Shown: positions 6,110 through 53,939 of the stretch, piece by piece | How positions within the stretch are numbered: position 1 is the stretch's first letter | Layout of the letters: every line of letters starts with the position of its first letter | From: Octopus sinensis | Lineage: Eukaryota | Reading direction: 5' to 3' | Assembly: GCF_006345805.1 (NCBI RefSeq) | Contig: NC_043010.1 | Location: 12,152,001 to 12,216,000, forward strand | Length of the DNA stretch: 64,000 bases | The notes under the pieces: model-generated | What the model was told of the DNA's origin: nothing | Databases searched by the model: none | The model's input: only the letters and a program-made list of their open reading frames with translations | Program-made: the position numbers and the translations under genes

Positions 6110-6162
<53 letters not shown>

Positions 6163-29921: not shown

Positions 29922-29961
29922 ATACGAAACTATTACTCACAAGAAAATATCAGTTTCGTAT
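29922..29961. promoter_or_regulatory. Conserved dyad upstream of gene A
   Basis: Perfect inverted repeat ATACGAAACT-N20-AGTTTCGTAT, 45 bp upstream of the ATG; homologous dyads lie upstream of B and C. Function is inferred. Confidence 0.5.
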
Positions 29962-30168
29962 GAATTAATTTTAATTATCACAAGTAATTAATTCATTGCG
30001 ACAACAAAACAAAAAAGTTTTCATTCATTCTAAGTTTGAAATCTGGTTTTTCGAAAGTCCTCTGCCCCACCCACCCCAGGGTCGTCAGCGCGCACTTTTT
30101 TTTCATTCATATTCGTTTTCTACATACTTATAAACACTCACCAGGCTGGTTAATAATTGGGTTTTTTT

Positions 30169-30593
30169 GGCAATATTTCGTCTCTAGTAGACTTTTCCGT
30201 CGATTTCCGTAAAAAAATTTTTTTTTCCATATGGGCTTGCGGGAACTTTTGAAGTAATGAGAGCGAAAGAGACTAAGAGAAAGCGATTGTATGACGAGGG
30301 AAGTTCTTTTGAAGTTACCGTGCATGGGAAGCATTGATGTACATGTGTGTGTGTGTGTGTTTGATGGGGTGTGGGAGACAGACAGTATGTTGTGTAAGTG
30401 AAGTGCTTCTGTTAGTGTGTGTGAAGAGACAGAGTAATGTGTGAAAGAAAGAGATAACTGAAATTTTTTACTCGGTGTATATGTATATGTATATGTATGT
30501 ATATTACTTCAAAAGTTCCCGCAAGCCCATATGTAAAAAAAAAAAAATTTTACGGAAATCGACGGAAAGGTCTACTAGAGACGAAAGATCGCC
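30169..30593. mobile_element. GGCGATCTTTCG-family foldback MITE
   Basis: Homolog of 27565-27968; TSD gttttttt/tttttttt. Confidence 0.8.
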
Positions 30594-30796
30594 TTTTTTT
30601 TTGTTCCCCCCACCCTGGGTGGAGATGTTTATATCGACCGAAATTTCAACTTGTTAGTGCTTCTTCCTAAGTCCCACGTCCGCCGCATCTGGTTATAGAA
30701 AATCTGCCTCAGTAAACCCTAAGTGACCTATGCAAATATGGAAAAGCTGACGTTAAAATGATGATGATTATGATGTCCTGATCAAGGATGCACTTA

Positions 30797-30997
30797 CGGG
30801 CGAAATGCGTAGCCGTATTTCGTCTGCCGTTACGTTCCGAGTTCAAATTCCGCCGAGGTCGACTTTGCCTTTCATCCTTCCGGGGTCGATAAATTAAGTA
30901 CCAGTTACGCACTGGGGTCGATGTAATCGACTTAATCCGTTTGTCTGTCCTTGTTTGTCTCCTCTGTGTTTAGCCCCTTGTGGGCAGTAAAGAAATA
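30797..30997 (+). mobile_element. SINE family 1
   Basis: Similarity to other copies. Confidence 0.85.
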
Positions 30998-31606
30998 TAT
31001 ATCAATTTGCATTTTAATTTGCCAGAGTAAACCTTTGAATTAAAAATACTTAAATTAGGGCGAAAGATGGATACTTTCATACAAAAAAGAATATGAATCA
31101 AGAAAGTTTCAAGAAAATTACTTAAGTTCCGTATTTCTGAAGAAGTTAATTGAACTATTTTCAGTCTCGTTTTATGTTATTAAAAATTTTTTTCGAAAAT
31201 TTATGATTTTTATCAAACCTAAACCTTACTGGTCATGGGATATGCTAGAAACAACAGCCAAATCTCCCTTAAATCACACACCTTTTTATATGAATTATTT
31301 TTTTCTTTTTACCAAAAAGTCTTCTCCTAAAGCTTTTAATTGCGTTGTACACCAAAAAACTCATTATACATAGTGCCCACAAAATCGACCAAAATCAGTC
31401 CAGGAAAAAAAAATTTCCTTTTCTGCAATTTTTTTTTTTTTTTTTTTTGCTAAAATTATAGTCCAGAGCATTTGCAAAGGGCACCTTGAAAAAAAAGAAT
31501 CTGAAAATTCGCCATCAAAACAGAGAAATTTCAATATGCTGCTGCTTACTAAGTACGACATCAGCCCAAGATGCCCTTCCTGTCACCAATCCTTACCTGT
31601 TTCAAA

Positions 31607-31775
31607 GCAAGGAGTGGCTGTGTGTTAAGTAGCTTGCTAACCAACCACATGGTTCCGGGTTCAGTCCCACTGCATGGCATCTTGGGCAAGTGTCTTCTGC
31701 TATAGCCCCGGGCCGACCAATGCCTTGTGAGTGGATTTGGTAGACGGAAACTGAAAGAAGCCTGTCGTATATATG

Positions 31776-31806
<31 letters not shown>

Positions 31807-32005
31807 TTGTGTGTCTGTGTTTGTCCCCCTAGCATTGCTGGTGTGTTTACGTCCCCGTCACTTAGTGTTTCGGCAAAAGAGACTGATAGAATAAGTACTG
31901 GGCTTACAAAAGAATAAGTCCCGGGGTCGATTTGCTCGACTTAAGGCGGTGCTCCAGCATGGCTGCAGTCAAATGACTGAAACAAGTAAAAGAGAGTAAA
32001 GAGTA
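31607..32005 (+). mobile_element. SINE family 2
   Basis: Similarity to other copies. Confidence 0.85.
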
Positions 32006-32259
32006 AGGTAATATTTCTCAGAATATTGCAGATAAATGTCACTGCTTGTATAATAGTGACATTCAGTTGCAAATATCATTTGATGTCAAGACAAGGAGGT
32101 ACAAATACCCACACACAACAAGAATCCTAAGTATATAGATATGTGAATTCCACTATTTCTTCAGTCATTACTTACTTGAAGACACTTTTAACTCTCAGGC
32201 AAACCCAAAGAAGCAAGAGACTAGCTCAACAAAAATAAAATATTACTAACCTTTAACAT

Positions 32260-32562
32260 GTGGAGGCACATGGCCTAGTGGTTAGAGCAGCAGACTCATG
32301 GTTGAGGGATCGTGGGTTCGAATCTCAGACCAGGCGATGTGTGTGTTTATAAGCGAAACAGCTAAGCTCCACGTGGCTCCGGCAGAAGGTAATGGCAAAA
32401 CTTCTGCTGACTCTTTTACCACAAGTTTCTCTCACTCTTTCCTCCTGCATCTTGCAGCTCACCTGTGACAGACCGGCGTACCGTCCAGGTGGGGAACCTA
32501 TACGGCAAGGAGACAGGGAAACTGGCCTTTATGAGCCAGGCATGGCTCGAGAAGGAACAAAC
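32260..32562 (+). mobile_element. tRNA-headed SINE, family 3
   Basis: Similarity to other copies. Confidence 0.8.
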
Positions 32563-32832
32563 AATCTTTAATATGGTATCAGATATTCTGTTTTCCAGTA
32601 GTCTATACTACACAGGTATCCACTCTCAAGGCTTTCATTGGCCTAAGGCTATAATAGTAGGTGTCACACAGTGGGTCTGAACTCAGAATCCTGTGGTTGA
32701 TAAGCAAACTTTTTACCACACAACAACACCTTATTGTCATTTTTTTCTTATATTATATTTTTGAATCTATGGTTCTGTTTCAAACTGCTGTGATCAACTT
32801 GCTCTTAATGGAATAAGAAGCTGTTATCATAA

Positions 32833-33053
32833 CTCTTTCGTTACTGTATTTATTTTGAGATGCTCTGTGTTTCTTCCAATTATTTAAAATATAACGAAGA
32901 ATTTAGTAAAATAACATGTTTATCATTAAGCTAGTGTTAGGAACATAAACTGTGACTAAGTTTTGGTGGAAGATTTGAATTCAAAACTTATGAAAACAAG
33001 ACATTTATACTAAAGAGCCAGAGCCGGTTTCAGCCGGGTTGGTAACAAAAGGG
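32833..33053. mobile_element. piggyBac-like MITE
   Basis: Homolog of 23171-23391. Confidence 0.8.
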
Positions 33054-33592
33054 TTAGTAACCCTGATGTGATCTGAATACACAGCAATCTTCTGCACAGA
33101 CAGAAGTATAAAGTCACAAATATGAATTTCATGAAGAAAAGCCTTGATCTGGTTAAAATATTTTCCTGGTGTCAAAACGAAGGAAGATCACCAACCAGAT
33201 GTAAGCACAAATTACCCCAAACTATTTAATTTTATTCGTTAAGTCAGGACAAACACTTCTTTCATCAAAGCGTGAGCACTCAAATCATCGGCTGGCTATT
33301 TTGGTTGAAGATAAACAGCAACAAACAACACGGTGGGTGGAACGTGATCTTTCCAAAGGTCAGCACAAATTTTGCATTAGCCGCCAAGGGGTAAGGGAGA
33401 TAACTTTGATGTAAGATTATGAAATTGAGTTCCGAAGCAGAGAGGACTGAAAAAGTGTCCTGCATATGGTTAAGCAAACGTCATTATTAAATTTGTTCAT
33501 TCTAAAGGCTATGGTGATGTAGGTTCGAAATATCTGTGATAGCGGCAAGGTGGTGCACTAAAGTAAAATACCGTACGGTAATTATAAAACAA

Positions 33593-33792
33593 GGCGGCGA
33601 GCTGGCAGAAACGTTAGCACGCCGGATGAAATGCTTAGCGGTATTTCGTCTGTCGTTACGTTGTGAGTTCAAATTCCGCCGAGGTTGACTTTGCCTTTCA
33701 TCCTTTCGGGGTCGATAAATTAAGTACCAGTTCCGCACTGGGGTCGATGTAATCGACTTAATACCTATGTCTGTCCTTGTTTGTCCCCTCTG
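33593..33792 (+). mobile_element. SINE family 1
   Basis: Similarity to other copies. Confidence 0.85.
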
Positions 33793-34159
33793 TGGGATAA
33801 GCATGGTGATGTAAGGCCGTTGCATAGTTTCTGAAGTGAATGCCCTTCTAAGCACCAACCACTTTGCAGAGTGTACTGGGTGATTTGTATGTGGCACCTA
33901 CACCAGTGCTTTTTACATGGCACCATCATAGATGTAACTGAAGTGAATAGTTAAAAGGAATATTCTTCTGCTTACAGGTGTTAATAATAAATGAGTCAGT
34001 CAAATCACAAAGTGGCATAACTTCACTTTGGCACTCACCCAATCACCAACATTGTTTCCTTATAACTTCCTCAATAATGCATAATATATGTAAACACATA
34101 TATATAAATATTAAATTTCTAAATATCTCATAGAGATATGTACGGTGGTGGGGGTGATA

Positions 34160-34419
34160 GAGTGGTTGTATACTGTCAATTTAATGTGACAGTAGGGGAT
34201 TACACCACCACTGTTTAGCCCTAGGAAGCATCGACGCTTCCTGTCGGCTTCAACACATTTCCTGTGTCCAGCTGTTGGGGGTATTTGTCTCCTCTTCGTA
34301 AATATATAAGGACACAGGAAATGTGTCGACGCCATCAGGAGGCGTCGATGCTTCCTAGGGCTAAACAGCGGTGGTGTAATCCCTTACTGTCACATTAAAT
34401 TGACAGTATACAACCATTC
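34160..34419. mobile_element. Foldback MITE of unassigned superfamily
   Basis: ~85-bp near-perfect inverted arms plus inner acacatttcctgtgtcc/ggacacaggaaatgtgt arms. Confidence 0.75.
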
Positions 34420-34578
34420 CATATATATATATATTATGAAAATCTTTTTACATCATTTCACTTAGACTGTGGCCATGCTGGGATACCACCGTGAAGGATT
34501 TGGTTGAACAAATTTGACTCCAGAGCTTATTTTTCGCTCAAAGCATAAAAAAGAAAACAAAAATTCAAGCCTATAGAA

Positions 34579-34862
34579 CAGTGGTTCCTAATGTGGGCAG
34601 TATTGCCCAACCCCCTGGGGTCAGTGGAAAGTTCCAAATGGGGGTCATTAAAGAAAAGCGGGGCGATGATGGGGTAGCGATTCGTGTAAAAACAAACAAA
34701 ATAGTGGGTTCATTAGGTCAAATTCTATTTGTGAAATACAATTGCTTTGAATTTGCTTCAGAAAGAGGTCTATGCTTGTGATGGTTAGTTGGGGTGGGGG
34801 GCGCTATGAATGTGGCCTGGGTGTCAAGGGGGCGGCAACCTGAAAAAGTTTAGGAACCACTG
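34579..34862. mobile_element. hAT MITE
   Basis: CAGTGGTTCCTAA ... TTAGGAACCACTG; 8-bp TSD ctatagaa/ctacagaa. Confidence 0.8.
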
Positions 34863-35300
34863 CTACAGAAGAAAACACTTGCCCAAGGAGTTACCCAGTG
34901 GGACCAAACCCAGAACCATAAAGTTACAAAGTGAGCTTTTTAACCAACCTGTGCTTATATTATTGATTCCTTGCATCCATAGCTCAGTTCCTTGAATCCT
35001 TGGCTCAATTCCTTAAATTCACAGCTCAGCGAGCCAGTTACTATGCTTCATTTGCTAGGGTTGTGGGTTCAAGTACAGGTATATGAACGTCTTTCCAATG
35101 ATTCTTTATACACATCCAACCATCTTACAGTTTTTAAAAAATTACCATGGGATTTCCACGGGCATGGTTAGTCAAAAATAATAACATTTTATAAGCAACT
35201 TTTGCATATCTACCCGAGTGCACCCTGCTCTACACTGACATTGTTCCATGATAACTTTCAGAAAAATGTATATATTTTAATTAAATTTTCAACAAGCATA

Positions 35301-35701
35301 GGCGCAGGAGTGGCTGTGTGGTAAGTAGCTTGCTTACCAACCACAGGGTTCCGGGTTCAGTCCCACTGCGTGGCATCTTGGGCAAGTGTCTTCTGCTATA
35401 GCCCCGGGCCGACCAATGCCTTGTGAGTGGATTTGGTAGACGGAAACTGAAAGAAGCCTGTCGTATATATGTATATGTATGTGTGTGTGTGTTTGTGTGT
35501 CTGTGTTTGTCCCCCTAGCATTGCTTGACAACCGATGCTGGTGTGTTAACGTCCCCGTCACTTAGCGGTTCGGCAAAAGAGACCGATAGAATAAGTACTG
35601 GGCTTACAAAGAATAAGTCCCGGGGTCGATTTGCCCAACTAAAGGCGGTGCTCCAGCATGGCCGCAGTCAAATGACTGAAACAAGTAAGAGTAAGAGTAA
35701 G
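35301..35701 (+). mobile_element. SINE family 2
   Basis: Similarity to other copies. Confidence 0.85.
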
Positions 35702-35755
35702 TATCTTCCAGATGGTGTAGATTCTGATTACATTAGAATTTGTAGTAAAATATTT

Positions 35756-36145
35756 GGATCTTTTCGGTTTGAACAGCAGTTTTTTAAAATAATTTCCCCA
35801 TAACTAAACACTTTTAAACTTCATATACTGGTAGAATGTGATTATAAAACATCTTTTTCTCTTGGCTTTATTGAGAAAATTCTATAGTTTGTAAGATATT
35901 TGTTGTTTTTTTTCTTCAATTTCTGCAATTTCAACCAATCAATGACGTCTATTGAGGTGAAAACATTCAGAGCCGTATGAATATGTCCCTCGTTTAAGAA
36001 ACAGATTGGATTTATTTACATTTCTGAAGAACAAAAGGTACCCTTCCCCCTAACCCTAAAACAGATCGATACTAGGGTTATAATTAAAGGTGACAATTTC
36101 ATATGACACCGCTAGAAAAAACTGCCGTTCAAACCGAAAAGATCC
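35756..36145. mobile_element. GGATCTTTTCGG-family MITE, Merlin-like
   Basis: Intact TIRs; perfect 8-bp TSD aaatattt; opposite orientation to 20894. Confidence 0.9.
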
Positions 36146-36377
36146 AAATATTTTTTCGGTGGGGTGAGGAGAAGAGTCTTAAATAATTTACATGAACCAA
36201 CTTTGTTTTCCTCATAACTTTCAGAAGAATGAGTATAAATTTTTCTGTAAATACCTTTCAGATAGTGTAGATTACAATTATATCAGCAGTGTACACATAC
36301 AGGGTCATCGAAAAAGGTTTCTGTGATTTTAGTTGTCAATTGCACTAGCTGTAAGCAAACGATTTTTATAAAATCAA

Positions 36378-36757
36378 CGTAGGAGTGGCTGTGTGGTAAG
36401 TAGCTTGCTAACCAACCACATGGTTCCGGGTTCAGTCCCACTGCGTGACATCTTGGGCAAGTGTCTTCTGCTATAGCCTCGGGCCAACCAAAGCCTTGTG
36501 AGTGGATTTGGTAGACGGAAACTGAAAGAAGCCAGTCGTATATATGTATATATATCTATGCATGTGTGTGTTTGTGTGTCTGTGTTTGTCCCCCTAGCAT
36601 TGCTTGACAACCGATGCTGGTGTGTTTATGTCCCCGTTATTTAGCAGTTCGGCAAAAGAGACCGATAGAATAAGTACTGGGCTTACAAAAGAATAAGTCC
36701 CGGGGTCGAGCATGGCTGCAGTCAAATGACTGAAACAAGTAAAAAAGTAAAAGAGAG
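36378..36757 (+). mobile_element. SINE family 2
   Basis: Similarity to other copies. Confidence 0.85.
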
Positions 36758-36839
36758 TGGGACTGTATAACAGCTGTAGGAGTTCTGCTATTAGCCACCG
36801 TGTTGTACTCGAAATGAGTGGGCGCATGCGCGATTATGG

Positions 36840-37920
36840 TGGTTGTATGGCAGAAAGCACATGTTGTGTGTGGTACGCTGAGTTTAAGTCAGTTGTTTTT
36901 GTGCAATGTCATTTTTGGCGTACTTATGGACAAGATCCACCTGCAGACAAAACCATTGTTCGTCGGTTTAACCAGTTTGAAGAAACTGGAAATATAAACA
37001 TTAAACCTCCAGGCCAGCCACGCACATCGGAAGAGAATGTGGAGATCTTTTCCTTTTGATGGACGGAATTTTCTAGTAAACTAAACAATTTGAAACTTCG
37101 TATACTGGTAGAATGTGTCAAAAGAAAACATTATTGTAAACAAAATTGTAATTTGTAAGTTTAACGTAGTTTAATTCTTCGAATTTTAACCAATGAAATG
37201 CCAGCATTTGAGCTGAAGTCATTTGCTGCGTTATCGATATTGATAAACAAACATAGCAGACGCACATATATTCAGATACATACACACGTACACTTGCACA
37301 CACACACACACACTCTGTCACGCACTCTCTCTCTCTCTCTCTCTCTCAAACACATGCATATACATTTGCATGAGACTGTCATGTTTTGATACAACTAAGA
37401 AGTCCATCACTCGACGTAGTTTGGAACTTCGTATGCCTAAAACAGCAATTCAAAATGTGCAGCATAAACACCTAAGACTGCATGCTTACAAAATTCAAAT
37501 GAGACAAAATTAAGGAGACACATAGGCCTCAAATATAGGCGTTGAATTTGCTGTAACGATGCTGAGAGAAATTGATGAAGATGATAGTTATCTTAACAGA
37601 ATTGTATTTAGTGATGAAGCAGCATTCCACATAAATGGTTGTGTTAACCGACATAACAGTCGGATATGAGGGGGCTCAGTGACCCAAAGGAGTTTTCCAG
37701 TACGTCCGTGATTCGCCCAGGGTTAATGTGTGGTGTGGACTTCGGCATAATCGTGTTAGCTCTTTCATGTTAGCAGAAAACACGATTGCGGCGATAGTTA
37801 CTTGGACATGCTAGAAATTTATGTGTTCCGTCAAATTGCAGACATTGAAAGAGAAAATGGAATAAGTGAAATCTTCCAGCTGGACGGAGCGACGGTTCAC
37901 TACAGCCATAATGTGAAAAC
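36840..37920 (+). pseudogene. Tc1/mariner transposase pseudogene interrupted by a GGATC-family MITE fragment (~37043-37390)
   Basis: HTH-like N-terminus (SVVFVQ...DPPADKTIVRRFNQFEETG); LHAYKIQ, FSDEAAFH...VNRHN, SPRVNVWCG and FQLDGA motifs, with stops and frameshifts. Confidence 0.8.
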
Positions 37921-37934
37921 TCCTCAAACCAAAG

Positions 37935-38100
37935 AAAACTGTAGATTCTATTAATGATACCTGGTAAAATCTATCAGATAACTGCAGCTTCGAAAGTATC
38001 TTTATTTTCATACTCAGTAGGTGCCAAGAAACATGTCAACTCCACAAAGTGGTACAGGTCTTTTGCAGTATTGTATTGCATTTCACCTGTTGACATGGTC
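37935..38100 (-). pseudogene. Decayed fourth copy of the Merlin-derived gene (3' end of exon 1 plus donor)
   Basis: Minus strand reads CFLAPTEYENKDTFEAAVI**ILPG|GTATC, with two in-frame stops replacing RW. Adjacent intron sequence (gtagattctatt) matches gene B. Confidence 0.8.
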
Positions 38101-38646
38101 CACTGTCATCTACTATGGCTGTAGCATCTTAAAATTGTTCTTCATCATCTCATTCCAAGCCATTTTTTTGCTTTTTTTTTCACACAGGTACTATTTATTT
38201 TGAGTAGTCAGCTCATACTCATGCAGATGTCACTCTTTCTTGCATGCTACATCTGATACAGATACACACACACACGTGTACTGATTATGACTTCTCTAGC
38301 TTTCCATAGTTTGTTTCTATCATTTGATCCTGTCAAACCTACATACATTCACTATAGAAACAACAATTACAGCCACTACAAGAATTTTGAAATTTCAATT
38401 CATTGGTCAATTTCATCTAACGTTTTAATTTTCATTTGAAGATGAAATAATCTGACATAGTCAGTTCAATGCTTTCCATTGGTGAAAATTAGCCAATCAG
38501 TTTCACTCATCAAAATCTAAGCAAACTCCCATTGGGAAGCCTATCGCTCACTGTTTAAAACACCTAATCCACAAATTTAATCAGTGAGATACTAGTGGCC
38601 TTAGTAGCTAGGAAACCAGCCTATATTATTTTACTATTTTACGAAA

Positions 38647-38862
38647 GGCAGTGAGCTGGCAGAAACGTTAGCACGCCGGGCGAAATGCGTAGCCGTATTT
38701 CGTCTGCCGCTATGTTCTGAGTTCAAATTCCGCCGAGGTCGACTTTGCCTTTCATCCTTTCGGGGTCGATAAATTAAGTACCAGTTACGCACTGGGATCG
38801 ATGTAATCGACTTAACCCGTTTGTCTGTCCTTGTTTGTCCCCTTGTGGGTAGTAAAGAAATA
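38647..38862 (+). mobile_element. SINE family 1
   Basis: Similarity to other copies. Confidence 0.85.
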
Positions 38863-39229
38863 GATATTATTTTACGATTTGCAAACGCTCCCACAATCAT
38901 TACCATGATTGTTGCACAAACTTTCTATTTCATGCTCACTTATTCTCAGTGAAATTACACAAGAAAAATTCACACACATATTCTCATTTGAAAATACTCA
39001 GTAACACTCACACGTAGATAGGCAGATGGGCAGTGTTGTTATTTTCCTTTCTTTTCACCTCATACAACTCTTTACCAATTCTCTTTTACATCAAGGTAAA
39101 ACAAAGAGCTGTATGTCTTGAAACTCCCCCCCATCCAACTTTTACCACTGGTTCTTGGGCAGAATCAGCTGTTTCAATCAATTCAACATTTATCCAGGTT
39201 ATCATGAACTTGTGAAATGTATTCAGTTC

Positions 39230-39612: not shown

Positions 39613-39829
39613 TATGTATGTTTCACAGTTCCTTTGGTACAATAAAAATTTGTTGGGATTCAAATAGATGTACAACTGGTTTTCTCAAAAAACGTCTTAT
39701 CAAAATATCTTGGAAAATAAAATCCTATCAGATAAGTTTGTGCTCTGTTAAATATCCAGTCATTTATTCTTTGATGAAAATGAACCTTCATGTGAAAATT
39801 GTAAAAGTGAATGGATCAGCCAACCTGCT

Positions 39830-41451: not shown

Positions 41452-41747
41452 TTAGACTTTATACAAATGTTTGATACAGTAAATTAGGGCAGCGAATTTA
41501 TCGTTATTCTTAAAATGAGATCTCCACATAAATTCTGTTAAATGAGAATAAAATAAGGCTTTGTTATTAATTGAATGTCTTCGTCGTAGCTGTTGCCTGA
41601 ATCTGAGCCACATTTTGCTGATATTTTGAATGTGGATCTCTGGGTCATTTGGGTTTTCATAGTCTATATATTCATGAGTGTATATGCCTTGTTCAATCTG
41701 GTCAATTTGAAGATATTCAGCCCATATATCTGATATAATATGAGTGC
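41452..41747 (-). CDS. Merlin-derived gene B, exon 2
   Basis: Acceptor cattacag|GC. Open frame: (G)THIISDIWAEYLQIDQIEQGIYTHEYIDYENPNDPEIHIQNISKMWLRFRQQLRRRHSINNKALFYSHLTEFMWRSHFKNNDKFAALIYCIKHLYKV*. Confidence 0.88.
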
Positions 41748-43330: not shown

Positions 43331-43409
43331 ACATGGTTACAAATCAAAGTTCAAAATTGTCTTAAATTTCACTTGCTGTAAATTGGGCTAAGCTTGTCAT
43401 TCTGTAGAT

Positions 43410-45286: not shown

Positions 45287-45977
45287 CTGGTAAAATCCAC
45301 CGGATAATTGCAGCTTCGAATGCATCTTTATTTTCATGTTCAATGGGTACAAGGAAACATTTGTCGGTGCCACGTTCGATTCCACCAAAAACACGAAATC
45401 CTTTCAAATGCCTTTTATTGGATTTAGATCTGGAAAATGTAGTTATGTCTATTTCAACAACTTTCGGTTCACCTGTCTGTAAATCGAAGCCGCCTATCTC
45501 AGGTGCGTCATCTATTTCGGTGGGGTGGTCTTCCAGGAACCGTTCTAGTAGTTCTCGGATGAGCCTGAACAGGTCAATGCTTGATGTCGTGCAGATGTCT
45601 GTTTCAAAGGTGATTTCATTATGCAGGTAATTTCTCGACCACATGTACATGAACCATAGGAACGTTGTCAAGGAGAGGTGACTGTTTTCGAAAAAGGACC
45701 CTTTGCGGACAGATCGAACGAAGTTATGCTTCCGGCAGCTCCATCGTTTGCCGTCGCCTCCGCTGTTGCGAGTGACGAACGAACAAGGGTTACTACAAGT
45801 GGGACACAGGAAAGAATTGCTTATAAGCTTGTATTTAGCTAACCACATCATCGCTGTATCTTTCGTGGAGGTCTGTTGGAAGAGATCGGAGAACGTCCAG
45901 GTCTCTTGCCTAATTTCTTCATCGTCTATGATGTCCGTACTTATCATTTTGCGGCTGGGTTGCTTAGGGCGAGACAT
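45287..45977 (-). CDS. Merlin-derived gene B, exon 1 (691 nt; joins 41747-41452; 328 aa total)
   Basis: ATG at 45977 (MSRPK...) aligns with the A and C starts. Same motifs; donor CAG|GTATGA at 45287. Confidence 0.9.
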
Positions 45978-46029
45978 TCTGATACAAAACCAAACCACGA
46001 AAAGGAATCAGGGAAGAAAATTTCTCTAC

Positions 46030-46070
46030 AGGCGAAATCAAGATTCTTAAAGGAAATGTCAGTTTCGTAT
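46030..46070. promoter_or_regulatory. Conserved dyad upstream of gene B
   Basis: AGGCGAAATC-N21-AGTTTCGTAT, 53 bp upstream of the ATG. Confidence 0.45.
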
Positions 46071-46507
46071 CAATCAATTTGCATCACAAATGAATGAATT
46101 AATTAATAATAATTAACATAAAATTTCTTATTCAGAAATATAGGACTTAATTCTAATAAAGTAACTTATTTGAAGCATTGCCTCTTTTCGTTAACAGAAA
46201 GGAAAAGATGCAATTTAATCTTTTTATTTTGTTTTTTTCTTTTTTTTTTAATGTTGGTAAACTTAGATTTTTAAATGTCAGCCTCGTTGTGAAATGTAAA
46301 CAAATGTTGCATTTCAGATCCGAAAGGGGTGGAGTCCGGATCCAAAGCACCTTCATACATAAATAAACGGCGAGAACTTCTTTTGTTGTTGCTTCGCTTT
46401 TTTCAATAGTTTTCACGCATTTTTTATATGGTGTTCTATCGCCTCGACGAATTAAATGTTTTCAGTATGAAAGATTATGATTATGCTAAAAAAAAAAAAA
46501 AAAAATT

Positions 46508-46670
46508 CACAGGAGTGGCTGTGTGGTAGGTAGTTTGCCTACCAACCACATGGTTCTGGGTTCAGTCCCACTGCGTGGCATCTTGGGCAAGTGTCTTCTG
46601 CTATAGCCCCGGGCCGACCAATGCCTTGTGAGTGGATTTGGTAGACGGAAACTGAAAGAAGCCTGTCGTA

Positions 46671-46727
<57 letters not shown>

Positions 46728-46930
46728 GTCTGTGTTTGTCCCCCTAGCATTGCTTGACAACCGATGCTGGTGTGTTTACGTCCCCGTCACATAGCGGTTC
46801 GGCAAAAGAGACCGATAGAATAAGTACTGGGCTTACAAAGAATAACTCCCGGGGTCGATTTGCTCGACTAAAGGCAGTGCTCCAGCATGGCCGCAGTCAG
46901 ATGACTGAAACAAGTAAAAGAGTAAAAGAG
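46508..46930 (+). mobile_element. SINE family 2
   Basis: Similarity to other copies. Confidence 0.85.
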
Positions 46931-47584
46931 TAATATTTTGGTGAATTTTTCAGCGGAAATTTTTAACAGGTGATTGCAACCTCGTGGGAGAAGATAACTG
47001 ACATGTATCAAGGATTTTTTTTCTTTCCTTTATCTATTTTCTTTTTGGCGAGACTTCCTTTTGTACCCCACTCCACAAAAAACACCCCTTTTTTATTTTT
47101 TTTCCTAAACAAACCCCTGTTTTCGGCTGGGAAAAATACGAAAAAATTAGCATCTTGAAATCCCCCACTCCCAATTTCTTCATTTTTGACTCGTTTTTCA
47201 GAATTTTTTTTTTTTCAAAATATGCGGTAAAATACGGAGATTATGATTCTGAAAAAAATGTCCAAAAATTTTTGAAGTTAGGGTTAGGGTTTTAGGATTA
47301 CGGTTAAGGATAGGGTTAGGGAAAAAAGTGAAAAATTAAGAAATTGGGGGGAAGGGGGCCGAAATTTCAAAATGACGATTTTTTTCCTGGAATCTCCGTA
47401 TCCGAAAACAACGGTTTTTGGAAAAAATAATTGGGAGAAAGTCTTCCCTCTTTTTTTCCACACAGCAGAGATGCCACCACCCAACAAAATTTTAAATTTC
47501 TACAATTTTCATGCTCTTTTTTTTTTTTTTTTTCCTTCAAGAAACAGTGATAAGTCTTCCAGAACTACTGCATCCAAAACATCT

Positions 47585-47734
47585 GGTGCTACTTAAATAC
47601 AGGTGATACGTACACAACATTTTAAATATACGTTATGTGGACATGTAATGACACCCTAACCATAACCCTAAAACTAACCCTCCCCTTCATATCATTACAT
47701 TGATGCAGTGGGACCTCTGTATTTAAGTAGTGCC
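47585..47734. mobile_element. GGTACTACTTAAATACAG-type MITE
   Basis: TIR GGTGCTACTTAAATACAG / CTGTATTTAAGTAGTGCC; degenerate TSD; internal CCCTAA-like repeats. Confidence 0.7.
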
Positions 47735-47789
47735 AAATATCCTCCTTTTACATTTTTCAAATTCTTTTCCAGCTTGTTTCTCTTTCTCT

Positions 47790-48174
47790 CTTTCTCTTTT
47801 ACTTGTTTCAGTCATTTGACTGCGGCCATGCTGGAGCACCGCCTTTAATCGAGCAACTCGACCCCGGGACTTATTCTTTTGTAAGCCCAGTACTTATTCT
47901 ATCGGTCTTTTTTGCCGAACCGCTAAGTAACGGGGACATAAACACACCAGCATCGGTTGTCAAGCAATGCTAGGGGGACAAACACACACATGCATATATA
48001 TACATATATACGACGGGCTTCTTTCAGTTTCCGTCTACCAAATCCACTCACAAGGCTTTGGTTGGCCTGGGGCTATAGCAGAAGACACTTGCCCAAGGTG
48101 CCACGCAGTGGGACTGAACCCGGAACCATGTGGCTGGTAAACAAGCTACTTACCACACAGCCACTCCTGCGCCT
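47790..48174 (-). mobile_element. SINE family 2
   Basis: Similarity to other copies. Confidence 0.85.
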
Positions 48175-49249
48175 GTTTATTTATTTATTTTTGTATGTTT
48201 GGAAAGGTGGGCAGTATGATTCGAAAAACAAATTTTGTGATCTTTTGCACCTAAGAAAGCACTTTCAGAAATAGCAAAAGTTATGAATGATTCAAGGTCT
48301 CTGAGAAACAAGAGATAAACTACTGCAGCTTCTTTCATTTTGTGTATGTGTGTGCATGGTACCAATTGTAAAAGCTTCTTTGTGACTGAGTATACAAATT
48401 ATAAAAGTGTCTTGTATGTGTGCATGTGTGTGTGTCAGCACACGTGCTCAGATTATTCAAAAACGTCTTTTGTTTTGCATGTGTGCAGGAGAAAAATATA
48501 ATTATGAAAAAGGAACACAAAGATATTACATTGACATGGATCTAGTCTTTCTCACTTCTTAATCATATAATTATGAAAAAAGAACACAAAAATATTCTTT
48601 CTACACAAGTCCTAATTTTTCAGTTAGGCCTTGTTTAGAATTACATTGACCCGGATCTAATCTTTCTCACTTCTTCTTAATCATTCAGACATATTGTACC
48701 CATTTTGTAAGCTGTGACCAATGGTCATTGAGTTAACAATGACAATTTGTCTCTTGTTGATATCAATACTAAACCAGCTGCGGGTAGTAAGCTATGAAAT
48801 TTTTTAATTCTCTCACTTTTTTGTAATTCAGACCACCTCATAATCCCAGCAAACAAAATGGAAAACACATCGCTCTGGAGGATGGCAAGGGAGATGCTAT
48901 GGAACAGCCACTCTGACTCACAGGTCTCATACTTGCAGATAGCCATCATCTCTTTCTCCTTTATATATTCTCCATGCTCATAAGCTCTCTTAATAGTATA
49001 AGTTTATTTCAACATCAGTAACAGAAAGTGTGCAGTTATTCTTCATGACACGCCTCACACCTCTGAGTCTCACATCATAGAACGTACGCAAACCATTTTT
49101 TTTTTTTGCCTCTCCCTTTGCAAGCTATTTAACATTTTACTCAGCTGCTCCCTTCCTTCCTGGCTTCTTAAGTATGACTATATGATTTTAATACTCTATT
49201 TAGAGTGACGCTAGGAAGGGCACCCTGGCATTTGGAAGGGCATCCTTGG

Positions 49250-49395
49250 CGTTAGGAAGGGCATCCAGCTGTAGAAACTCTGCCAAATCAAGATTGGAGA
49301 CTGGTGCAGCCATCTGGTTCACCAGCCCTCAGTCAAAATCGTCCAATCCGTGCTAGCATGGAAAGCGGACATTAAATGATGATGATGATGATGAT
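49250..49395 (+). mobile_element. RTE 3'-tail fragment
   Basis: Shared 3' end. Confidence 0.75.
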
Positions 49396-49557
49396 TTACA
49401 GTACTATTCCACCACATTTTCAGCTTGTGTTGAACTGGAACCTTGCACCAACCACAGGCTTCATCTGCAGCCTGCAACAGATTGCTAATAACTTCCAGAT
49501 CTTCTGTGCTGAAAAGTCTCTATCTTGTCTTTCTTCCTGTCATAAGTATCAGCTAGA

Positions 49558-49935
49558 GTGGAGGCGCAATGGCCCAGGGGTTAGGGCAGCGGACTCGCGG
49601 TCATAAGATCGTGGTTTCGATTCCTAGACCGGGCGTTGTGAGTGTTTATTGAGCGAAAACACCTAAAAGCCCCACGAGGCTCCGGCAGGAGATGGTGGTG
49701 ATCCCTGCTGTACTCTTTCACCACAACTTTCTCTCACTCTTACTTCCTGTTTCTGTTGTACCTGTATTTCAAGGGGCTGGCCTTGTCACTCTCTGTGAAT
49801 ATTCCCGAGAACTACGTTAAGGGTGCACGTGTCTGTGGAGTGCTCAGCCACTTACACATTAATTTCACGAGCAGGCTGTTCCGTTGATTCGGATCAACCG
49901 GAACCCTCATCGTCGTAACCGACGGAGTGCTTCCA
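49558..49935 (+). mobile_element. tRNA-headed SINE (long subtype)
   Basis: TSD tatcagctaga. Confidence 0.85.
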
Positions 49936-50350
49936 CTATCAGCTAGAATCTCTCAGAATCTAGCTGGAGGTTCTTTTACCTTCCATGTCATCTTTCTCCA
50001 AATTGTACTCTGTCTCTGAGTCTATCAATCTCATACTCTAAAGTAACTAATCACTCATCTATGCTGGTGCTTTCTTCACTAGAGAAACACTTAGCTTTTA
50101 CAAGCATCTACCTGTCTTGTTTGCTCATGAGAATGAAGTCGGTGTTTGCCTAATATTTAGATGATAAGGTGGCTGGTCAACTACTTGAATTTCTGTTGTA
50201 AATGTTTGCACCATATAACTTGAGTTTTGATCACAAAACTATAAGCTATCATAATATTGTTTCATTATGCTAAAGGTTTTTATGATAATAAGCTAGACAA
50301 CAATTGAGGTTATTGAAAAATTTATATTTAGGTAACTTATATTGTTAGAA

Positions 50351-50655
50351 GTGGAGGCACATGGCCTAGAGGTTAGAACAGCGGACTTGCGGTTGAGGGA
50401 TCGTGGGTTCGAATCTCAGACAGGGCAATGTGTGTGTTTATGAGCAAAACACCTAAGTTCCATGTGGCTCCAGCAGAAAGTAATGGCAAACTTCTGCTGA
50501 CTCTTTCGCCACAATTTTCTCTCACTCTTTCCTCCTATATCTAGCAGCTCACCTGCAATGGACCAGCGTCCATCCAGGTGGGAAACCTATACGCCAATGG
50601 AACTGGAGAAACTGGTCCATTATGAGCCAGGCATGGCTTGAGAAGGAACAAACAT
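50351..50655 (+). mobile_element. tRNA-headed SINE, family 3
   Basis: Similarity to other copies. Confidence 0.8.
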
Positions 50656-50847
50656 ATTGTTAGAAACAATGCCAAATATTTAGCACAGCTCAGCAGGTGT
50701 AAATTTCATAGTATCACATTATTCAGATAAGAACCTCTCTGTACACAATATGTTTTGTAACATAACTGAACACAGGCTTAAATGTTGGACAAGAATTATG
50801 AGAGAAAAAAAAACTAAATTAAGTAGAAAAATATAAAATCAAATTTA

Positions 50848-51143
50848 TTAGACTTTATACAAATGTTTGATACAATAAATGAGAGCAGCAAATTTATCAT
50901 TATTCCTAAAATGAGATCTCCACATAAATTCGGTTAAATAAGAGTGAAATAAGGCTTTATTATTTATTGAATGTTTACGTTGCAATTTTTGTTTAACTCT
51001 CAGCCACATCCCATCAATATTTTGGGTGTGGATCTCCGGATCATTTGGATTTTCATAGTCTATATATTCATGAGTGTATATGCCTTGTTCAATCTGGTCA
51101 ATTTGAAGATATTCAGCCCATATATCTGATATAATATGAGTGC
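50848..51143 (-). CDS. Merlin-derived gene C, exon 2
   Basis: Acceptor cattacag|GC. Open frame: (G)THIISDIWAEYLQIDQIEQGIYTHEYIDYENPNDPEIHTQNIDGMWLRVKQKLQRKHSINNKALFHSYLTEFMWRSHFRNNDKFAALIYCIKHLYKV*. Confidence 0.88.
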
Positions 51144-51256
51144 CTGTAATGAAGATGATAGTTTATACAGAAATGATGACTTATTTGTAGAACTAAAATG
51201 AGGTGTTTCATTAATACATTTTCCAAAGGACAAAATGAGCAAAAAGATTTAATCAA

Positions 51257-51705
51257 GTGGACCAGGGGCAAATTGGCTGTGCATCAGGACCCCTACTTTC
51301 GGTGACCACAGCCACCTCCCCAGAACCTGATTCCAATGTCTTTCCTTGGGCATGGATACATTGAAACTCTGACGTCCGGCAGCTGACTTGGCAGACACCC
51401 ATAAAATTATTAACCATTTTACAAACTAACTCTGAGCACCTTTTCAAACTCCACCTGTCTAACACCCGTGGACATATTTACAAAGTCAGAAAACAGCACA
51501 ACTCCCATGACTTTAGGAAACATTTTTTCACGCTGAGAGTTGCTGAAGCATGGAACAAACTGCCGGCATCAGTTGTTAGTTGTCAGAGCACTGCATCCTT
51601 CAAAACTTCCATGCTTCCTGAGATTCGCCAACACTACACCTGATTTCCCCCCCTCCATACACACGCAAGCATGTATCTGACTCATACACTGTTCACTTTC
51701 CAGAT
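51257..51705 (+). mobile_element. CR1-type LINE 3' fragment
   Basis: TRGHIYKVRKQH...FFTLRVAEAWNKLPASVV. Lies in the intron of gene C. Confidence 0.8.
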
Positions 51706-51840
51706 ATTTCCCATTTTTGTAACTTTTTCTAACAAGTAAACATCATTTTCTTGGAGAGTTGCGCTTCTAAATTGTTAGTGCGATAGGGAAAAAGAAAAAA
51801 ATTTAGCCAAGGATTGTGACCTTTGAATATCAGGCTCTGC

Positions 51841-52268
51841 GGTACTACTTAAGAAGAGTGGTCCCGGTGCGCGCACTCGCGCATCCGCACTAGTTAGTCG
51901 TGACTAGTCGATCCTACAACGACTACCTAGCAAAGTAAATAAAACACAAAATAAATCATTTTTTTACACAAAGTAAATAATTTTTTGGATCTTTTCTAAA
52001 AGAAGGCCAGATTTTTCTAGTTAACTAAATAATTTGAAACTTCGTATACTGGTAGAATGTGTCAAAAGAAAACATTAATTTCAACTAGTTTTTTTGAGAA
52101 AAATGTATTTTATAAGTTTAAACGTAGTTTAAATCTGCAATTTTAACCAATTGTATTGTCTGTTTTGTTAAAACAAAGTACATAAAACGCAAAAACACAA
52201 AGTAAGGATCGACTAGTTAGCGCGGATGCGCGAGTACGCGCACCGGGATCACTCTTCTAAGTAGTACC
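51841..52268. mobile_element. GGTACTACT-family MITE, Merlin-like
   Basis: Long TIR GGTACTACTTAAGAAGAGTGGTCCCGGTGCGCG; perfect 9-bp TSD aggctctgc. Confidence 0.9.
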
Positions 52269-52404
52269 AGGCTCTGCTTTCATTTTTCAAACTACAGCTG
52301 GTATAATTTTGTTTAATCCGGTCTCCTGAAGTTAAACTACAATATATACATATCTTTAAAAGACCCTTCCGTTTGTGTGTGTGTTTCAAATTCGAAGAGT
52401 CCAG

Positions 52405-52620
52405 ATATATATATGCGTGTGTGTCTGTGTTTGTCCCCCTAGCATTGCTTGACAACCGATGCTGGTGTGTTTATGTCCCCGTTACTTAGCGATTCGGCAA
52501 AAAGAGACCGATAGAATAAGTACTGGGCTTACAAAAGAATAAGTCCCGGGGTCGAGTTGATCGATTAAAGGCGGTGCCCCAGCATGGCCGCAGTCAAATG
52601 ACTGAAACAAGTAAAAGAAT
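52405..52620 (+). mobile_element. SINE family 2, 3' half
   Basis: Similarity to other copies. Confidence 0.8.
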
Positions 52621-52877
52621 AAACTATTCATTTTAAGTATTGTTAAATATTAACCGTTGTTTAGTCCTAGGTCGCTGGCCGTCAAAAGAAATTGTAGAAG
52701 AAGCAGTTTGACAACGTGCCCCCTTTATCTAAGAATCCCCAACAGGGAGAACGAAAGAAAAGTAAAGGCAAAGCTGGATTTTAGGAATAGTATATCGAAA
52801 CGACGACCACACAAACCAAAGGAAGGCGAAAGTAAAGAATACGAACACCCGGTGTTTAGGGTTAGGGTTAAGGTTAC

Positions 52878-53102
52878 GGCGAGGTGGCAGAAACGTTAGC
52901 ACGCCGGCCGAAATGCTTAGCGGGATTTCGTCTGCCGCTACGTTCTGAGTTCAAATTCCGCCGAGGTCGACTTTGCCTTTCATCCTTTCGGGGTCGATTA
53001 AATAAGTACCAGTTACGCACTGGGGTCGATATAATCGATTTAATCCGTTTGTCCTTGTTTATCTCCTCTGTGTTTAGCCCCTTGTGGGTAGTAAAGAAAT
53101 AG
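52878..53102 (+). mobile_element. SINE family 1
   Basis: TSD ggttaaggttacg. Confidence 0.85.
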
Positions 53103-53177
53103 GTTAAGGTTACGCCGAAAATGGGTGATGTGCGTATTCTTTACCTCCGCTCCAAAGGAAACTTGATTTTGTCATAC

Positions 53178-53868
53178 CTGGTAAAATCCATCGGATAATT
53201 GCAGCTTCGAACGCGTCTTTATTTTCATGTTCAATAGGTACAAGGAAACATTTGTCAGTGCCACGTTCGATCCCACCAAAAACACGAAATCCTTTCAAAT
53301 GCCTTTTATTGGATTTAGATCTGGAAAATGTAGTTATATCTATTTCGACGACTTTTGGTTCACCTGTCTGTAAATCGAAGCCGCCTATCTCAGGTGCGTC
53401 ATCTATTTCAGTGGGATGGTCTTCCAGAAACCGTTCTAGTAGTTCTCGGATGAGCCTGAACAGGTCAATAGTTGACTTTGCACAAACATTTGTCTCATGA
53501 GTGATTTCATTATGTAGATAATCTCTTGACCACATATACATAAGCCATATGAATGTTGTCAGCGAGAGGTGACTATTCTCGAAAAAGGACCCCTTCCGGA
53601 TCGATCGGACGAAGTTATGCTTCCGACATCTCCACCGTTTTCCATCGATAATATCTTTCTGGTTTATAAATGTACATTGTTTGTCACAAACGAGACACCT
53701 AAAAGAATTGCTTATGAGTTTATATCTTGCTAACCATGTAACTGCTACATCTTTTGTGGAAGTTTGTTGAAAGAGATCAGAAAATGTCCAAGACTCTTGC
53801 CTAATGTTTTCGTCATCGACGATGTCGGTGCAAATCACTTTCCGAATTGGGCGATTACCGCGGGACAT
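53178..53868 (-). CDS. Merlin-derived gene C, exon 1 (691 nt; joins 51143-50848; 328 aa total)
   Basis: ATG at 53868 (MSRGN...). Same motifs; donor CAG|GTATGA at 53178. Confidence 0.9.
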
Positions 53869-53899
53869 GGCAAAGAACGTAAACAATAATATTGGCTTT

Positions 53900-53939
53900 A
53901 TGCGAAACTAATGCTATGAAAAAATTACTAATTTCGTAT
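53900..53939. promoter_or_regulatory. Conserved dyad upstream of gene C
   Basis: ATGCGAAACT-N20-AATTTCGTAT, 32 bp upstream of the ATG. Confidence 0.45.

What the first reader, a model, noticed from the sequence alone, without database searches (positions are those of the whole stretch)
29922..53939. Conserved CGAAA-N-TTTCG dyad just upstream of all three start codons
Seen: A has ATACGAAACT-N20-AGTTTCGTAT (29922-29961, a perfect inverted repeat), B has AGGCGAAATC-N21-AGTTTCGTAT (46030-46070) and C has ATGCGAAACT-N20-AATTTCGTAT (53900-53939). They lie 32-53 bp from the ATG, in upstream DNA that is otherwise poorly alignable. Both the half-site and the spacing are conserved. The TTTCG half-site also occurs in the TIRs of two local MITE families (GGATCTTTTCGG, GGCGATCTTTCG). 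Inference: a binding site for a dimeric protein, possibly the encoded proteins themselves (autoregulation, or a relic transposase site), or a 5'-UTR hairpin.
Basis: partly seen in the sequence, partly recalled or inferred. Interest (0 to 1): 0.7.

Follow-up and report, generated by a model that had tools for sequence, protein, structure and literature searches.

The report
Octopus transposase-derived genes share promoter palindrome
Three neighbouring octopus genes descended from a "Merlin" jumping-gene enzyme each carry the same short palindromic DNA motif just upstream of their start codon; the motif is kept across most of the gene family, so it is most likely an ordinary but previously undescribed gene-control site, not an RNA hairpin or a transposon end.

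Summary
The genes match Octopus sinensis proteins residue for residue. They are two-exon, Merlin/IS1595-type transposase-derived genes under purifying selection. I collected 15 family promoters from O. sinensis, O. bimaculoides and one unidentified relative. In gene orientation the element reads TTTATACGAAACTAAC-N-TTAGTTTCGTATAAA. The gene-distal arm ATACGAAACT is present with at most one mismatch in 8 of 9 paralog lineages, 52-99 bp before the ATG (221 bp in one). Synonymous sites between these paralogs differ at 38-76% of positions, and the surrounding DNA does not align. The gene-proximal arm decays in about half the lineages. Arm spacing varies from N17 to N21. There is no covariation, and four of the eight elements folded do not form the hairpin. 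The motif is absent from 80 distant relatives. Its likeness to local Merlin-type MITE ends is at chance level. Best reading: a selected protein-binding cis-regulatory element in the proximal promoter, ancestrally palindromic, with the distal half-site essential. The binding factor is unknown; an IRF-like factor or the family's own proteins are leads only. No transcription start data were available, so a linear 5'UTR element is not excluded. Moderate interest.

The parts
29952..29961 (-). Gene A, gene-distal arm ATACGAAACT (read on the minus strand), starting 84 bp before the ATG
   Evidence: exact match to the family-wide 10-mer
29922..29931 (-). Gene A, gene-proximal arm AGTTTCGTAT (minus strand); perfect complement of the distal arm, spacer N20
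46061..46070 (-). Gene B, gene-distal arm ATACGAAACT, starting 93 bp before the ATG
46030..46039 (-). Gene B, degenerate gene-proximal arm GATTTCGCCT, spacer N21; the element does not fold as a hairpin
53930..53939 (-). Gene C, gene-distal arm ATACGAAATT (one mismatch; exact in the O. bimaculoides ortholog), starting 71 bp before the ATG
53900..53909 (-). Gene C, gene-proximal arm AGTTTCGCAT followed by AAAG (CATAAAG; TATAAAG in O. bimaculoides), spacer N20
29187..29877 (-). Gene A exon 1 (691 nt, GT donor): N-terminal helices, zinc-ribbon-like region and first part of the DDE/RNase H domain
   Evidence: Exon 1 plus exon 2 translate exactly to P0001
20477..20775 (-). Gene A exon 2, stop codon included; intron of 8411 bp
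45287..45977 (-). Gene B exon 1
   Evidence: Exact to O. sinensis XP_029645244 (P0002)
41452..41747 (-). Gene B exon 2, stop codon included; intron of 3539 bp
53178..53868 (-). Gene C exon 1
   Evidence: Exact to O. sinensis XP_029644884 (P0044)
50848..51143 (-). Gene C exon 2, stop codon included; intron of 2034 bp

Best explanation
The dyad is a promoter-proximal cis-regulatory DNA element. It was inherited from the common ancestor of a cephalopod family of domesticated Merlin/IS1595-type transposase genes and has been kept by purifying selection through repeated gene duplication.

The ancestral form was an imperfect palindrome of about 45 bp: two inverted copies of TTTATACGAAACTAA whose 10-bp cores lie 27-31 bp apart, start to start. 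The gene-distal copy, with core ATACGAAACT followed by a conserved A-A/T-C-A-C-T-T-T, is the essential site for a sequence-specific DNA-binding protein. The gene-proximal copy is an auxiliary second site that several lineages have lost or, in one lineage, replaced with a direct repeat.

Shown: the sequence, its position, its retention, the asymmetry between the arms, and the lack of structural covariation. Inferred: that it acts as DNA in the promoter, and that a protein binds it. Unknown: which protein. Two leads remain untested. One is an IRF-type factor, because CGAAACT equals the core of the published high-affinity IRF monomer probe. The other is the family's own N-terminal helix and zinc-ribbon region, which would mean auto- or cross-regulation.
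For: The 10-mer is exact in 6 of 9 paralog lineages and within one mismatch in 8 of 9, always in the same orientation, 52-99 bp before the ATG and 221 bp in one lineage. Shuffled promoters never share a 10-mer in more than 3 lineages.

Paralogs differ at 38-76% of synonymous sites, with dN/dS of 0.03-0.2 between orthologs, so neutral DNA of this age should be scrambled. The flanks are: 0.35-0.42 bits per position against 1.78 in the arm.

The motif is found on different chromosomes (CM046607, CM046614, CM016865) and in an unidentified relative with 62% protein identity (L008).

In about 250 kb of octopus DNA, every other hit within one mismatch lacks a partner arm, and their number (13) is about what a hand estimate gives for chance.

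The CGAAA/TTTCG core is well above its background density of 0.49 per 250 bp in most family promoters, typically 2-4 copies. This includes the one lineage that lacks the 10-mer, which has three TTTCG between -117 and -142.

The arrangement is flexible: N17-N21 spacers, a degenerate second arm, and a direct duplicate in LOC115214311. That is typical of clustered binding sites and not of a folded RNA.

There is no covariation, several members do not fold, and there is no Rfam match.
Against: No transcription start site, chromatin or binding data were available, so whether the element lies in the promoter or in the 5'UTR is inferred, not shown.

In A, C and LOC106879047 the arms are perfect over 10-15 bp and the RNA would fold well (-15.4, -9.9 and -20.2 kcal/mol; z -3.6, -3.5 and -6.9).

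A 15-bp half-site is long for a single transcription-factor domain.

One lineage (LOC106877799/LOC115219899) lacks the 10-mer altogether.

Between orthologs, arm conservation (3 changes in 60 positions) is not significantly better than the neutral level of about 10%.
Confidence: 0.6

Rival explanations
1. It is a 5'UTR RNA element. Transcription starts upstream of the dyad, and the element acts in the mRNA, either as a hairpin that controls translation or stability, or as a linear AUACGAAACU site for an RNA-binding protein.
For: It lies close to the ATG. In A, C and LOC106879047 it forms strong hairpins well beyond shuffled sequences. Variation in loop length (N17-N21) is easy for a hairpin to tolerate. 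The fixed orientation relative to the gene fits an RNA element as well as it fits a DNA site.
Against: There is no covariation: pairing equals the shuffled controls and only one pair changes on both sides. B, LOC115214311, LOC106879048 and L008 do not form the hairpin (z between +1.05 and -1.4). Changes in the arms are uncompensated, for example C.A and A.C mismatches in LOC106879049 and C. There is no Rfam match. The linear-RNA version is not excluded.
Confidence: 0.15
2. It is a relic of the ancestral Merlin transposon's end, a TIR or subterminal transposase-binding site, still bound by the family's own proteins as auto- or cross-regulation. This concerns origin and binding factor, so it is compatible with the best explanation as to function.
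For: The genes derive from a transposase and keep N-terminal helices and a zinc-ribbon-like region. The element sits where a 5' transposon end would lie. A long (15-bp) half-site is typical of transposase binding sites. Merlin-type MITEs with GG ends and 8-bp target-site duplications are present in the window, and Merlin is abundant in Octopus (PMC8101967).
Against: All described Merlin ends start with GG (PMC8101967), and the arms do not. Both arms lie upstream, and no copy follows any stop codon in 15 genes. No target-site duplication flanks the palindrome. The motif is at chance level and never upstream in 80 distant relatives covering 243 kb. Its similarity to the local MITE ends is at chance level. 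The motif stays invariant while the proteins diverge to 56% identity.
Confidence: 0.12
3. It is the core promoter itself. The proximal arm supplies a TATA box (GTATAAAG), or the pair supplies a TATA-like TTTATAC about 30 bp upstream of an initiator-like TTAGTTT. On this reading the palindrome is a symmetric, possibly bidirectional, core promoter.
For: TATAAA ends the proximal arm in four lineages (C in O. bimaculoides, LOC106879047, LOC106879049, LOC115214311). The distance from TTTATA to the A of TTAGTTT is about 29 bp in LOC106879047, which is the canonical TATA-to-initiator distance (own knowledge of that spacing).
Against: The invariant bases are ATACG-AA-T, not a TATA box. A, B, LOC115214311, LOC106879048 and L008 lack TTTATA before the distal arm, and A, B, LOC106879048 and L008 lack TATAAA after the proximal arm. 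In C, a proximal-arm TATA would put the start site about 4 nt before the conserved ATG.
Confidence: 0.08
4. It is the 3' end of a 5'UTR intron. The end of the distal arm (ACTAAC or ACTGAY) would be the branch point, the T-rich spacer the polypyrimidine tract, and an AG in the spacer or proximal arm the acceptor.
For: CTRAY-like sequence, then a T-rich run, then AG is seen in A, B, C, LOC106879047, LOC106879048 and L008. Annotated isoforms join exons of neighbouring paralogs.
Against: LOC106879049 and LOC115214311 have no AG in the spacer. A branch point does not explain an invariant ATACGAAA upstream of it. AG and T-runs are common in DNA with 38% G+C. No upstream exon is known.
Confidence: 0.05

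Closest known systems
Family-specific conserved promoter elements of clustered paralogs, such as the conserved sequence element upstream of each clustered-protocadherin variable exon (own knowledge)
   Same: A short motif at a similar distance upstream of each first exon in a tandem array is retained while the surrounding promoter DNA diverges. Annotated transcripts join the first exon of one paralog to the last exon of the next (P0024).
   Different: Here every gene has its own second exon. The motif is also present at unlinked family members. The sequence is unrelated. No binding factor and no role in promoter choice has been shown.
IRF half-site / ISRE (5'-AANNGAAA-3'; high-affinity monomer probe AACCGAAACT; PMC5861432)
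   Same: The core CGAAACT of both arms is identical to the core of the published IRF monomer probe. The CGAAA core recurs in family promoters.
   Different: The second A of AANN is T here. ISREs are direct repeats with a 2-3 bp spacer, whereas these are single half-sites inverted 27-31 bp apart. Conservation extends well beyond an IRF footprint (TTTAT... and ...TAACACTTT). No IRF binding was tested.
Merlin/IS1595 transposon terminal inverted repeats (PMC8101967)
   Same: An inverted repeat associated with a Merlin-type transposase gene, lying just 5' of the ORF.
   Different: [quoted passage not shown]
Domesticated DDE transposase genes that keep binding sites derived from their transposon, such as SETMAR with Hsmar1 ends (own knowledge)
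   Same: A transposase-derived host gene family under purifying selection, with the DNA-binding region kept and catalytic residues partly lost.
   Different: No genome-wide set of cognate sites is known, and binding of the proteins to the dyad is untested.

Membership tests
Merlin transposon TIR | Terminus begins with GG (all Merlin families, PMC8101967) | tested here: not met
   The arms read (TTT)ATACGAAACT, and no GG is found at either outer edge in 13 elements. The true Merlin-type MITEs in the window do start with GG.
Merlin transposon TIR | One inverted copy at each end of the element, flanking the transposase ORF | tested here: not met
   Both arms are upstream of the ATG. No copy within one mismatch lies near any of the stop codons examined.
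Merlin transposon TIR | 8-9 bp target-site duplication | tested here: not met
   The flanks of the palindrome (for example AACAA ... GCC) are not duplicated. The MITEs at 35756-36145 and 27565-27968 do have 8-bp duplications.
Structured RNA element (hairpin) | Base pairing kept through compensatory changes | tested here: not met
   73.8% of cells pair against 74.7% in shuffles, and 1 of 15 pairs changes on both sides.
Structured RNA element (hairpin) | Stable fold in all members | tested here: not met
   A, C and LOC106879047 fold well beyond shuffles and LOC106879049 weakly (z -2.26). B, LOC115214311, LOC106879048 and L008 do not fold.
Structured RNA element (hairpin) | The element is transcribed (lies downstream of the start site) | not testable with these tools
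   No start-site or RNA-seq data were available, and the annotations obtained start at the ATG.
Known Rfam family | Match at the gathering score | tested here: not met
   No match anywhere in the window.
IRF site / ISRE | Half-site AANNGAAA | tested here: inconclusive
   ATACGAAA matches 5 of the 6 specified positions, and CGAAACT equals the core of the monomer probe.
IRF site / ISRE | Two direct GAAA repeats with a 2-3 bp spacer | tested here: not met
   These are single half-sites, inverted, 27-31 bp apart.
IRF site / ISRE | Bound by an IRF protein | not testable with these tools
   Needs EMSA, DAP-seq or ChIP.
Palindromic site of a dimeric DNA-binding protein | Two inverted half-sites | tested here: met
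   Perfect arms of 10 bp (A), 14 bp (O. bimaculoides C) and 15 bp (LOC106879047).
Palindromic site of a dimeric DNA-binding protein | Both half-sites and their spacing conserved across members | tested here: not met
   The distal arm is conserved in 8 of 9 lineages. The proximal arm has at most one mismatch in about 3 of 9. Spacing is N17-N21.
TATA box core promoter | TATAAA 25-35 bp upstream of the start site in all members | tested here: inconclusive
   TATAAA is present in only 4 of 9 lineages. In C it would leave a leader of about 4 nt. The start site is unknown.
Domesticated Merlin/IS1595 transposase gene (the genes, not the dyad) | DDE_Tnp_IS1595 domain and RNase H/integrase-like fold | tested here: met
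   PF12762 at E 7e-13. AlphaFold model with pLDDT 80, and best fold matches to retroviral integrase cores.
Domesticated Merlin/IS1595 transposase gene (the genes, not the dyad) | Immobile: orthologs at syntenic positions, conserved intron, no TIRs, purifying selection | tested here: met
   The same three-gene array is present in O. bimaculoides. The same GT-AG intron follows codon 231. dN/dS is 0.03-0.2. The third catalytic residue E is D or S in Octopus, the first D is lost in P0010 and the second D in P0008.

The most novel reading that the evidence does not exclude
The palindrome is the cognate site of the family's own transposase-derived DNA-binding region. On this reading at least eight Merlin-derived paralogs in four or more loci form an auto- and cross-regulatory network. 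In the tandem arrays, where annotated transcripts already join exons of neighbouring paralogs, the element could act as a promoter-choice signal. This would be the first functionally anchored case of Merlin transposase domestication in animals.
Probability: 0.12. Interest if true: 0.7.

Novelty: new member of a known kind. Interest (0 to 1): 0.4.

Why it matters
Cephalopod gene regulation is almost unmapped, and I am not aware of a functionally characterised Merlin-derived host gene in animals. My literature searches found nothing on this family. A 10-bp motif held fixed across paralogs whose synonymous sites are largely saturated gives a concrete, testable handle. It defines the promoter of a family of domesticated transposases confined to Octopus and one unidentified relative in the data examined, and it offers a bait for identifying the regulator. 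It also provides a simple test of whether domesticated transposases still recognise a site next to their own genes. If the binding factor proves to be an ordinary transcription factor, the finding is a routine promoter motif.

Tried and rejected
1. RNA hairpin. Alignment A2 with the 15-pair dyad structure showed no covariation. Single-sequence folds fail in four members. Rfam gave no match.

2. Ortholog footprinting between O. sinensis and O. bimaculoides. The whole 170-450 bp upstream is about 90% identical, which equals the neutral level of 85-94%, so the comparison is uninformative. Counted by hand, the arms show 3 changes in 60 positions and the spacers 10 in 61, which is not significant.

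3. Link to the MITE ends. The MITEs are real and of Merlin type, but the longest word they share with the dyad is 6 nt, and 39% of shuffles reach that.

4. Deep conservation. In 80 relatives from metagenomes (243 kb) the motif is at chance level with no positional pattern. L010-L013 turned out to be one locus, so they gave no transposon ends. L009 has its own, unrelated AACTGAAAT repeats on both sides of its ORF.

5. Proximal-arm TATA box as the core promoter. Rejected as a general explanation (see rivals).

6. Literature on this gene family or its LOC identifiers. Nothing was found. The octopus haemocyte paper mentions IRF only in pathway legends, so I do not cite it as evidence that octopus has IRFs.

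7. Sequence search against PDB. No relative was found.

8. P0002, P0005 and P0007 could not be located in the contig index. Cluster members were used in their place.


Full report
**What is in the window**

The window is eukaryotic, about 39% G+C, and full of interspersed repeats. The three 'start codons' belong to three tandem genes on the minus strand. Each has two exons joined by a GT-AG intron after codon 231:
- A: 29877-29187 and 20775-20477.
- B: 45977-45287 and 41747-41452.
- C: 53868-53178 and 51143-50848.

Spliced this way, they translate exactly to XP_029644883 (which is also CAI9732498), XP_029645244 and XP_029644884 of Octopus sinensis. B and C differ from the O. vulgaris proteins, so the window is most likely O. 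sinensis.

**What the genes are**

The proteins carry the ISXO2-like/IS1595 DDE domain, PF12762 at E 7e-13. This is the transposase type of the eukaryotic Merlin superfamily (PMC8101967). An AlphaFold model (pLDDT 80, pTM 0.75) shows N-terminal helices, a beta-rich cysteine region and an RNase H-like core. Its best structural matches are retroviral integrase cores.

The genes are host genes, not transposons:
- The same three-gene array exists in O. bimaculoides (L004).
- The intron position is shared by all paralogs.
- dN/dS between orthologs is 0.03-0.17.
- The third catalytic residue (E in distant relatives) is D or S in Octopus. The first D is lost in P0010 and the second D in P0008.

**The observation**

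All three dyads are as described. They end 31-52 bp before the ATGs. CGAAA-N20-32-TTTCG occurs four times in the window against 0.59 expected.

**The element in gene orientation and across the family**

I collected 15 family promoters:
- the three in the window;
- their three O. bimaculoides orthologs (L004);
- LOC106879047, LOC106879048 and LOC106879049 of O. bimaculoides (L003, L001);
- LOC115214512 and its neighbour in O. sinensis (L007);
- LOC115214311 (L002);
- LOC106877799 and LOC115219899 (L005, L006);
- a 62%-identical relative from a Logan assembly of SRR11869391 (L008).

Read in the direction of the gene, the element is (AA)TTTATACGAAACTAACACTTT...TATTAGTTTCGTATAAAG. In LOC106879047 the arms are a perfect 15 bp (TTTATACGAAACTAA / TTAGTTTCGTATAAA), in O. 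bimaculoides C 14 bp, and in A 10 bp.

The gene-distal arm ATACGAAACT is exact in 6 of 9 paralog lineages and within one mismatch in 8 of 9. It is always in the same orientation and starts 52-99 bp before the ATG, or 221 bp in LOC106879048.

An unbiased count of shared 10-mers in the 250 bp upstream ranks it first, and 300 dinucleotide shuffles never exceed 3 of 9 lineages. Information content is 1.78 bits per position in the arm, 1.04 in the next eight bases, and 0.35-0.42 in the flanks.

The paralogs differ at 38-76% of synonymous sites, so neutral DNA of this age would not keep a 10-mer. This is purifying selection on the sequence.

In about 250 kb of octopus DNA, the other 13 hits within one mismatch have no partner arm. 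Their number is about what a hand estimate gives for chance.

**Asymmetry and flexibility**

The gene-proximal arm is intact or nearly so only in A, C and the LOC106879047/LOC115214512 lineage. It has two, three or more mismatches in B, LOC106879049, LOC115214311 and LOC106879048, and is unrecognisable in L008.

The spacer is N20, N21 and N20 in the window but N17-N21 across the family. LOC115214311 has two direct copies of the distal element 55 bp apart.

The one lineage without the 10-mer (LOC106877799/LOC115219899) still has three TTTCG cores between -117 and -142. The background density is 0.49 per 250 bp.

**Is it an RNA hairpin?**

On alignment A2 with the 15-pair dyad, 73.8% of cells pair against 74.7% in column-preserving shuffles. 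Only one pair changes on both sides, and the covariation score is below the shuffled mean. Pairing therefore only reflects the conservation of each arm.

A, C and LOC106879047 would fold well (z -3.5 to -6.9) and LOC106879049 weakly (z -2.26). B, LOC115214311, LOC106879048 and L008 do not. Rfam has no match.

A conserved hairpin is not supported. A linear RNA motif cannot be excluded, because no start-site data were available.

**Is it a transposon relic?**

All described Merlin ends start with GG and are flanked by 8-9 bp duplications (PMC8101967). The window does contain two such MITE families:
- GGATCTTTTCGG..., for example 35756-36145 with target-site duplication AAATATTT.
- GGCRATCTTTCG..., for example 27565-27968 with target-site duplication AAAATTAT.

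The dyad arms have no GG and no duplication. Both arms lie upstream, and there is no copy beyond any stop codon.

The longest word shared by the dyad and the MITE ends is TTTCGT, and 39% of shuffled ends do as well. In 80 distant relatives from metagenomes (243 kb), the motif is at chance level and never in an upstream position. The element was found only in Octopus and the one unidentified close relative.

**Orthologs**

Between O. sinensis and O. bimaculoides, the 170-450 bp upstream of A, B and C are about 90% identical throughout. This is the same level as introns and intergenic DNA, 85-94%. By hand count, the arms show 3 changes in 60 positions and the spacers 10 in 61.

**Mechanism**

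The most economical reading is a promoter-proximal binding element. It was ancestrally a long palindrome, its distal half-site is indispensable, and its proximal half-site is auxiliary.

The identity of the binding factor is open. The core CGAAACT equals the core of the high-affinity IRF monomer probe AACCGAAACT, and the IRF half-site is AANNGAAA (PMC5861432). However, ISREs are direct repeats 2-3 bp apart, and conservation here extends beyond an IRF footprint, so this is only a lead.

Binding by the family's own N-terminal region is possible but untested.

A TATA-box reading of the proximal arm (TATAAAG in four lineages) fails for C, where it would leave a leader of about 4 nt. It also does not explain the invariant bases.

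A 3' splice-site reading (ACTAAC, T-run, AG) fits six lineages but not two, and it does not explain ATACGAAA.

**Verdict**

It is a new example of a known kind of feature, a family-specific conserved promoter element. Its interest is moderate because of the genes it serves.

Noticed in passing
window 20477-53868 (genes A, B, C): The window matches Octopus sinensis, not O. vulgaris. The spliced models of B and C are identical to XP_029645244 and XP_029644884 and differ from the O. vulgaris proteins CAI9732499 and CAI9732500.
   Followed up: yes
window 29187-29877, 45287-45977, 53178-53868 versus L004 19191, 10001, 3870: Exon 1 of the three tandem genes has dS of 0.36-0.54 between O. sinensis and O. 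bimaculoides. Unlinked family members have 0.07-0.15, and flanking non-coding DNA diverges by about 0.1. O. bimaculoides A is as close to O. sinensis C as to A. This suggests gene conversion between the tandem paralogs that stops short of the promoters.
   Followed up: partly
window genes B and A; proteins P0024, P0029, P0033, P0036: Annotated isoforms join exons of neighbouring genes. P0024 is B exon 1 plus A exon 2. P0029 and P0033 join two family paralogs, and P0033 runs on into ribosomal protein S10. P0036 runs into a C2H2 zinc-finger gene. These are either read-through transcription in the arrays or annotation chimeras.
   Followed up: partly
window 20894-21311, 35756-36145, 27565-27968, 30165-30593: Two MITE families have GG termini and 8-bp target-site duplications (AAATATTT, AAAATTAT), which is the Merlin signature. 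One copy lies about 200 bp upstream of gene A's dyad.
   Followed up: partly
window 54040-54226 (copy of 1546-1731): An unrelated MITE (CAGTGGTTTTCAACC... ends) is inserted about 100 bp upstream of gene C's dyad in this genome and is absent from the O. bimaculoides ortholog. The essential promoter of C is therefore short.
   Followed up: partly
window 37923-38033 (-): An isolated fragment of a family gene (residues about 207-241, 57% identity) lies in the A-B intergenic region. It is probably a pseudogene remnant.
   Followed up: no
window 12082-15170 (+): Long ORFs of a LINE-type retrotransposon (endonuclease/reverse-transcriptase-like) account for the local rise in G+C to 0.47. I did not run a family search on them.
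   Followed up: no
window, e.g. 5906-6327, 10386-10783, 22353-22763 and more than 20 others: A repeat of about 400 bp (85-95% identity between copies) occurs more than 25 times in 64 kb, in both orientations, including within the introns of A, B and C.
   Followed up: no
L002 9847-9856 and 9902-9911: The LOC115214311 promoter carries two direct copies of the distal element (ATACGAAGCTAACAG and ATACGAAACTAACAC) 55 bp apart, in place of an inverted pair.
   Followed up: partly
L009 3703-3798, 4436-4475, 5752-5777: An intronless 39%-identical relative in a metagenome contig is flanked on both sides by repeated AACTGAAAT motifs in inverted orientation, with a 65-bp-arm palindrome just upstream of its ORF. 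It may be a still-mobile Merlin element with subterminal repeats.
   Followed up: no
alignment A3, columns around residues 81-84 of P0001: The fourth cysteine of the CxxC...CxxC zinc ribbon of distant relatives is H in most Octopus paralogs and D in P0008 and P0010. The DNA-binding region has therefore changed along with the loss of catalytic residues.
   Followed up: no
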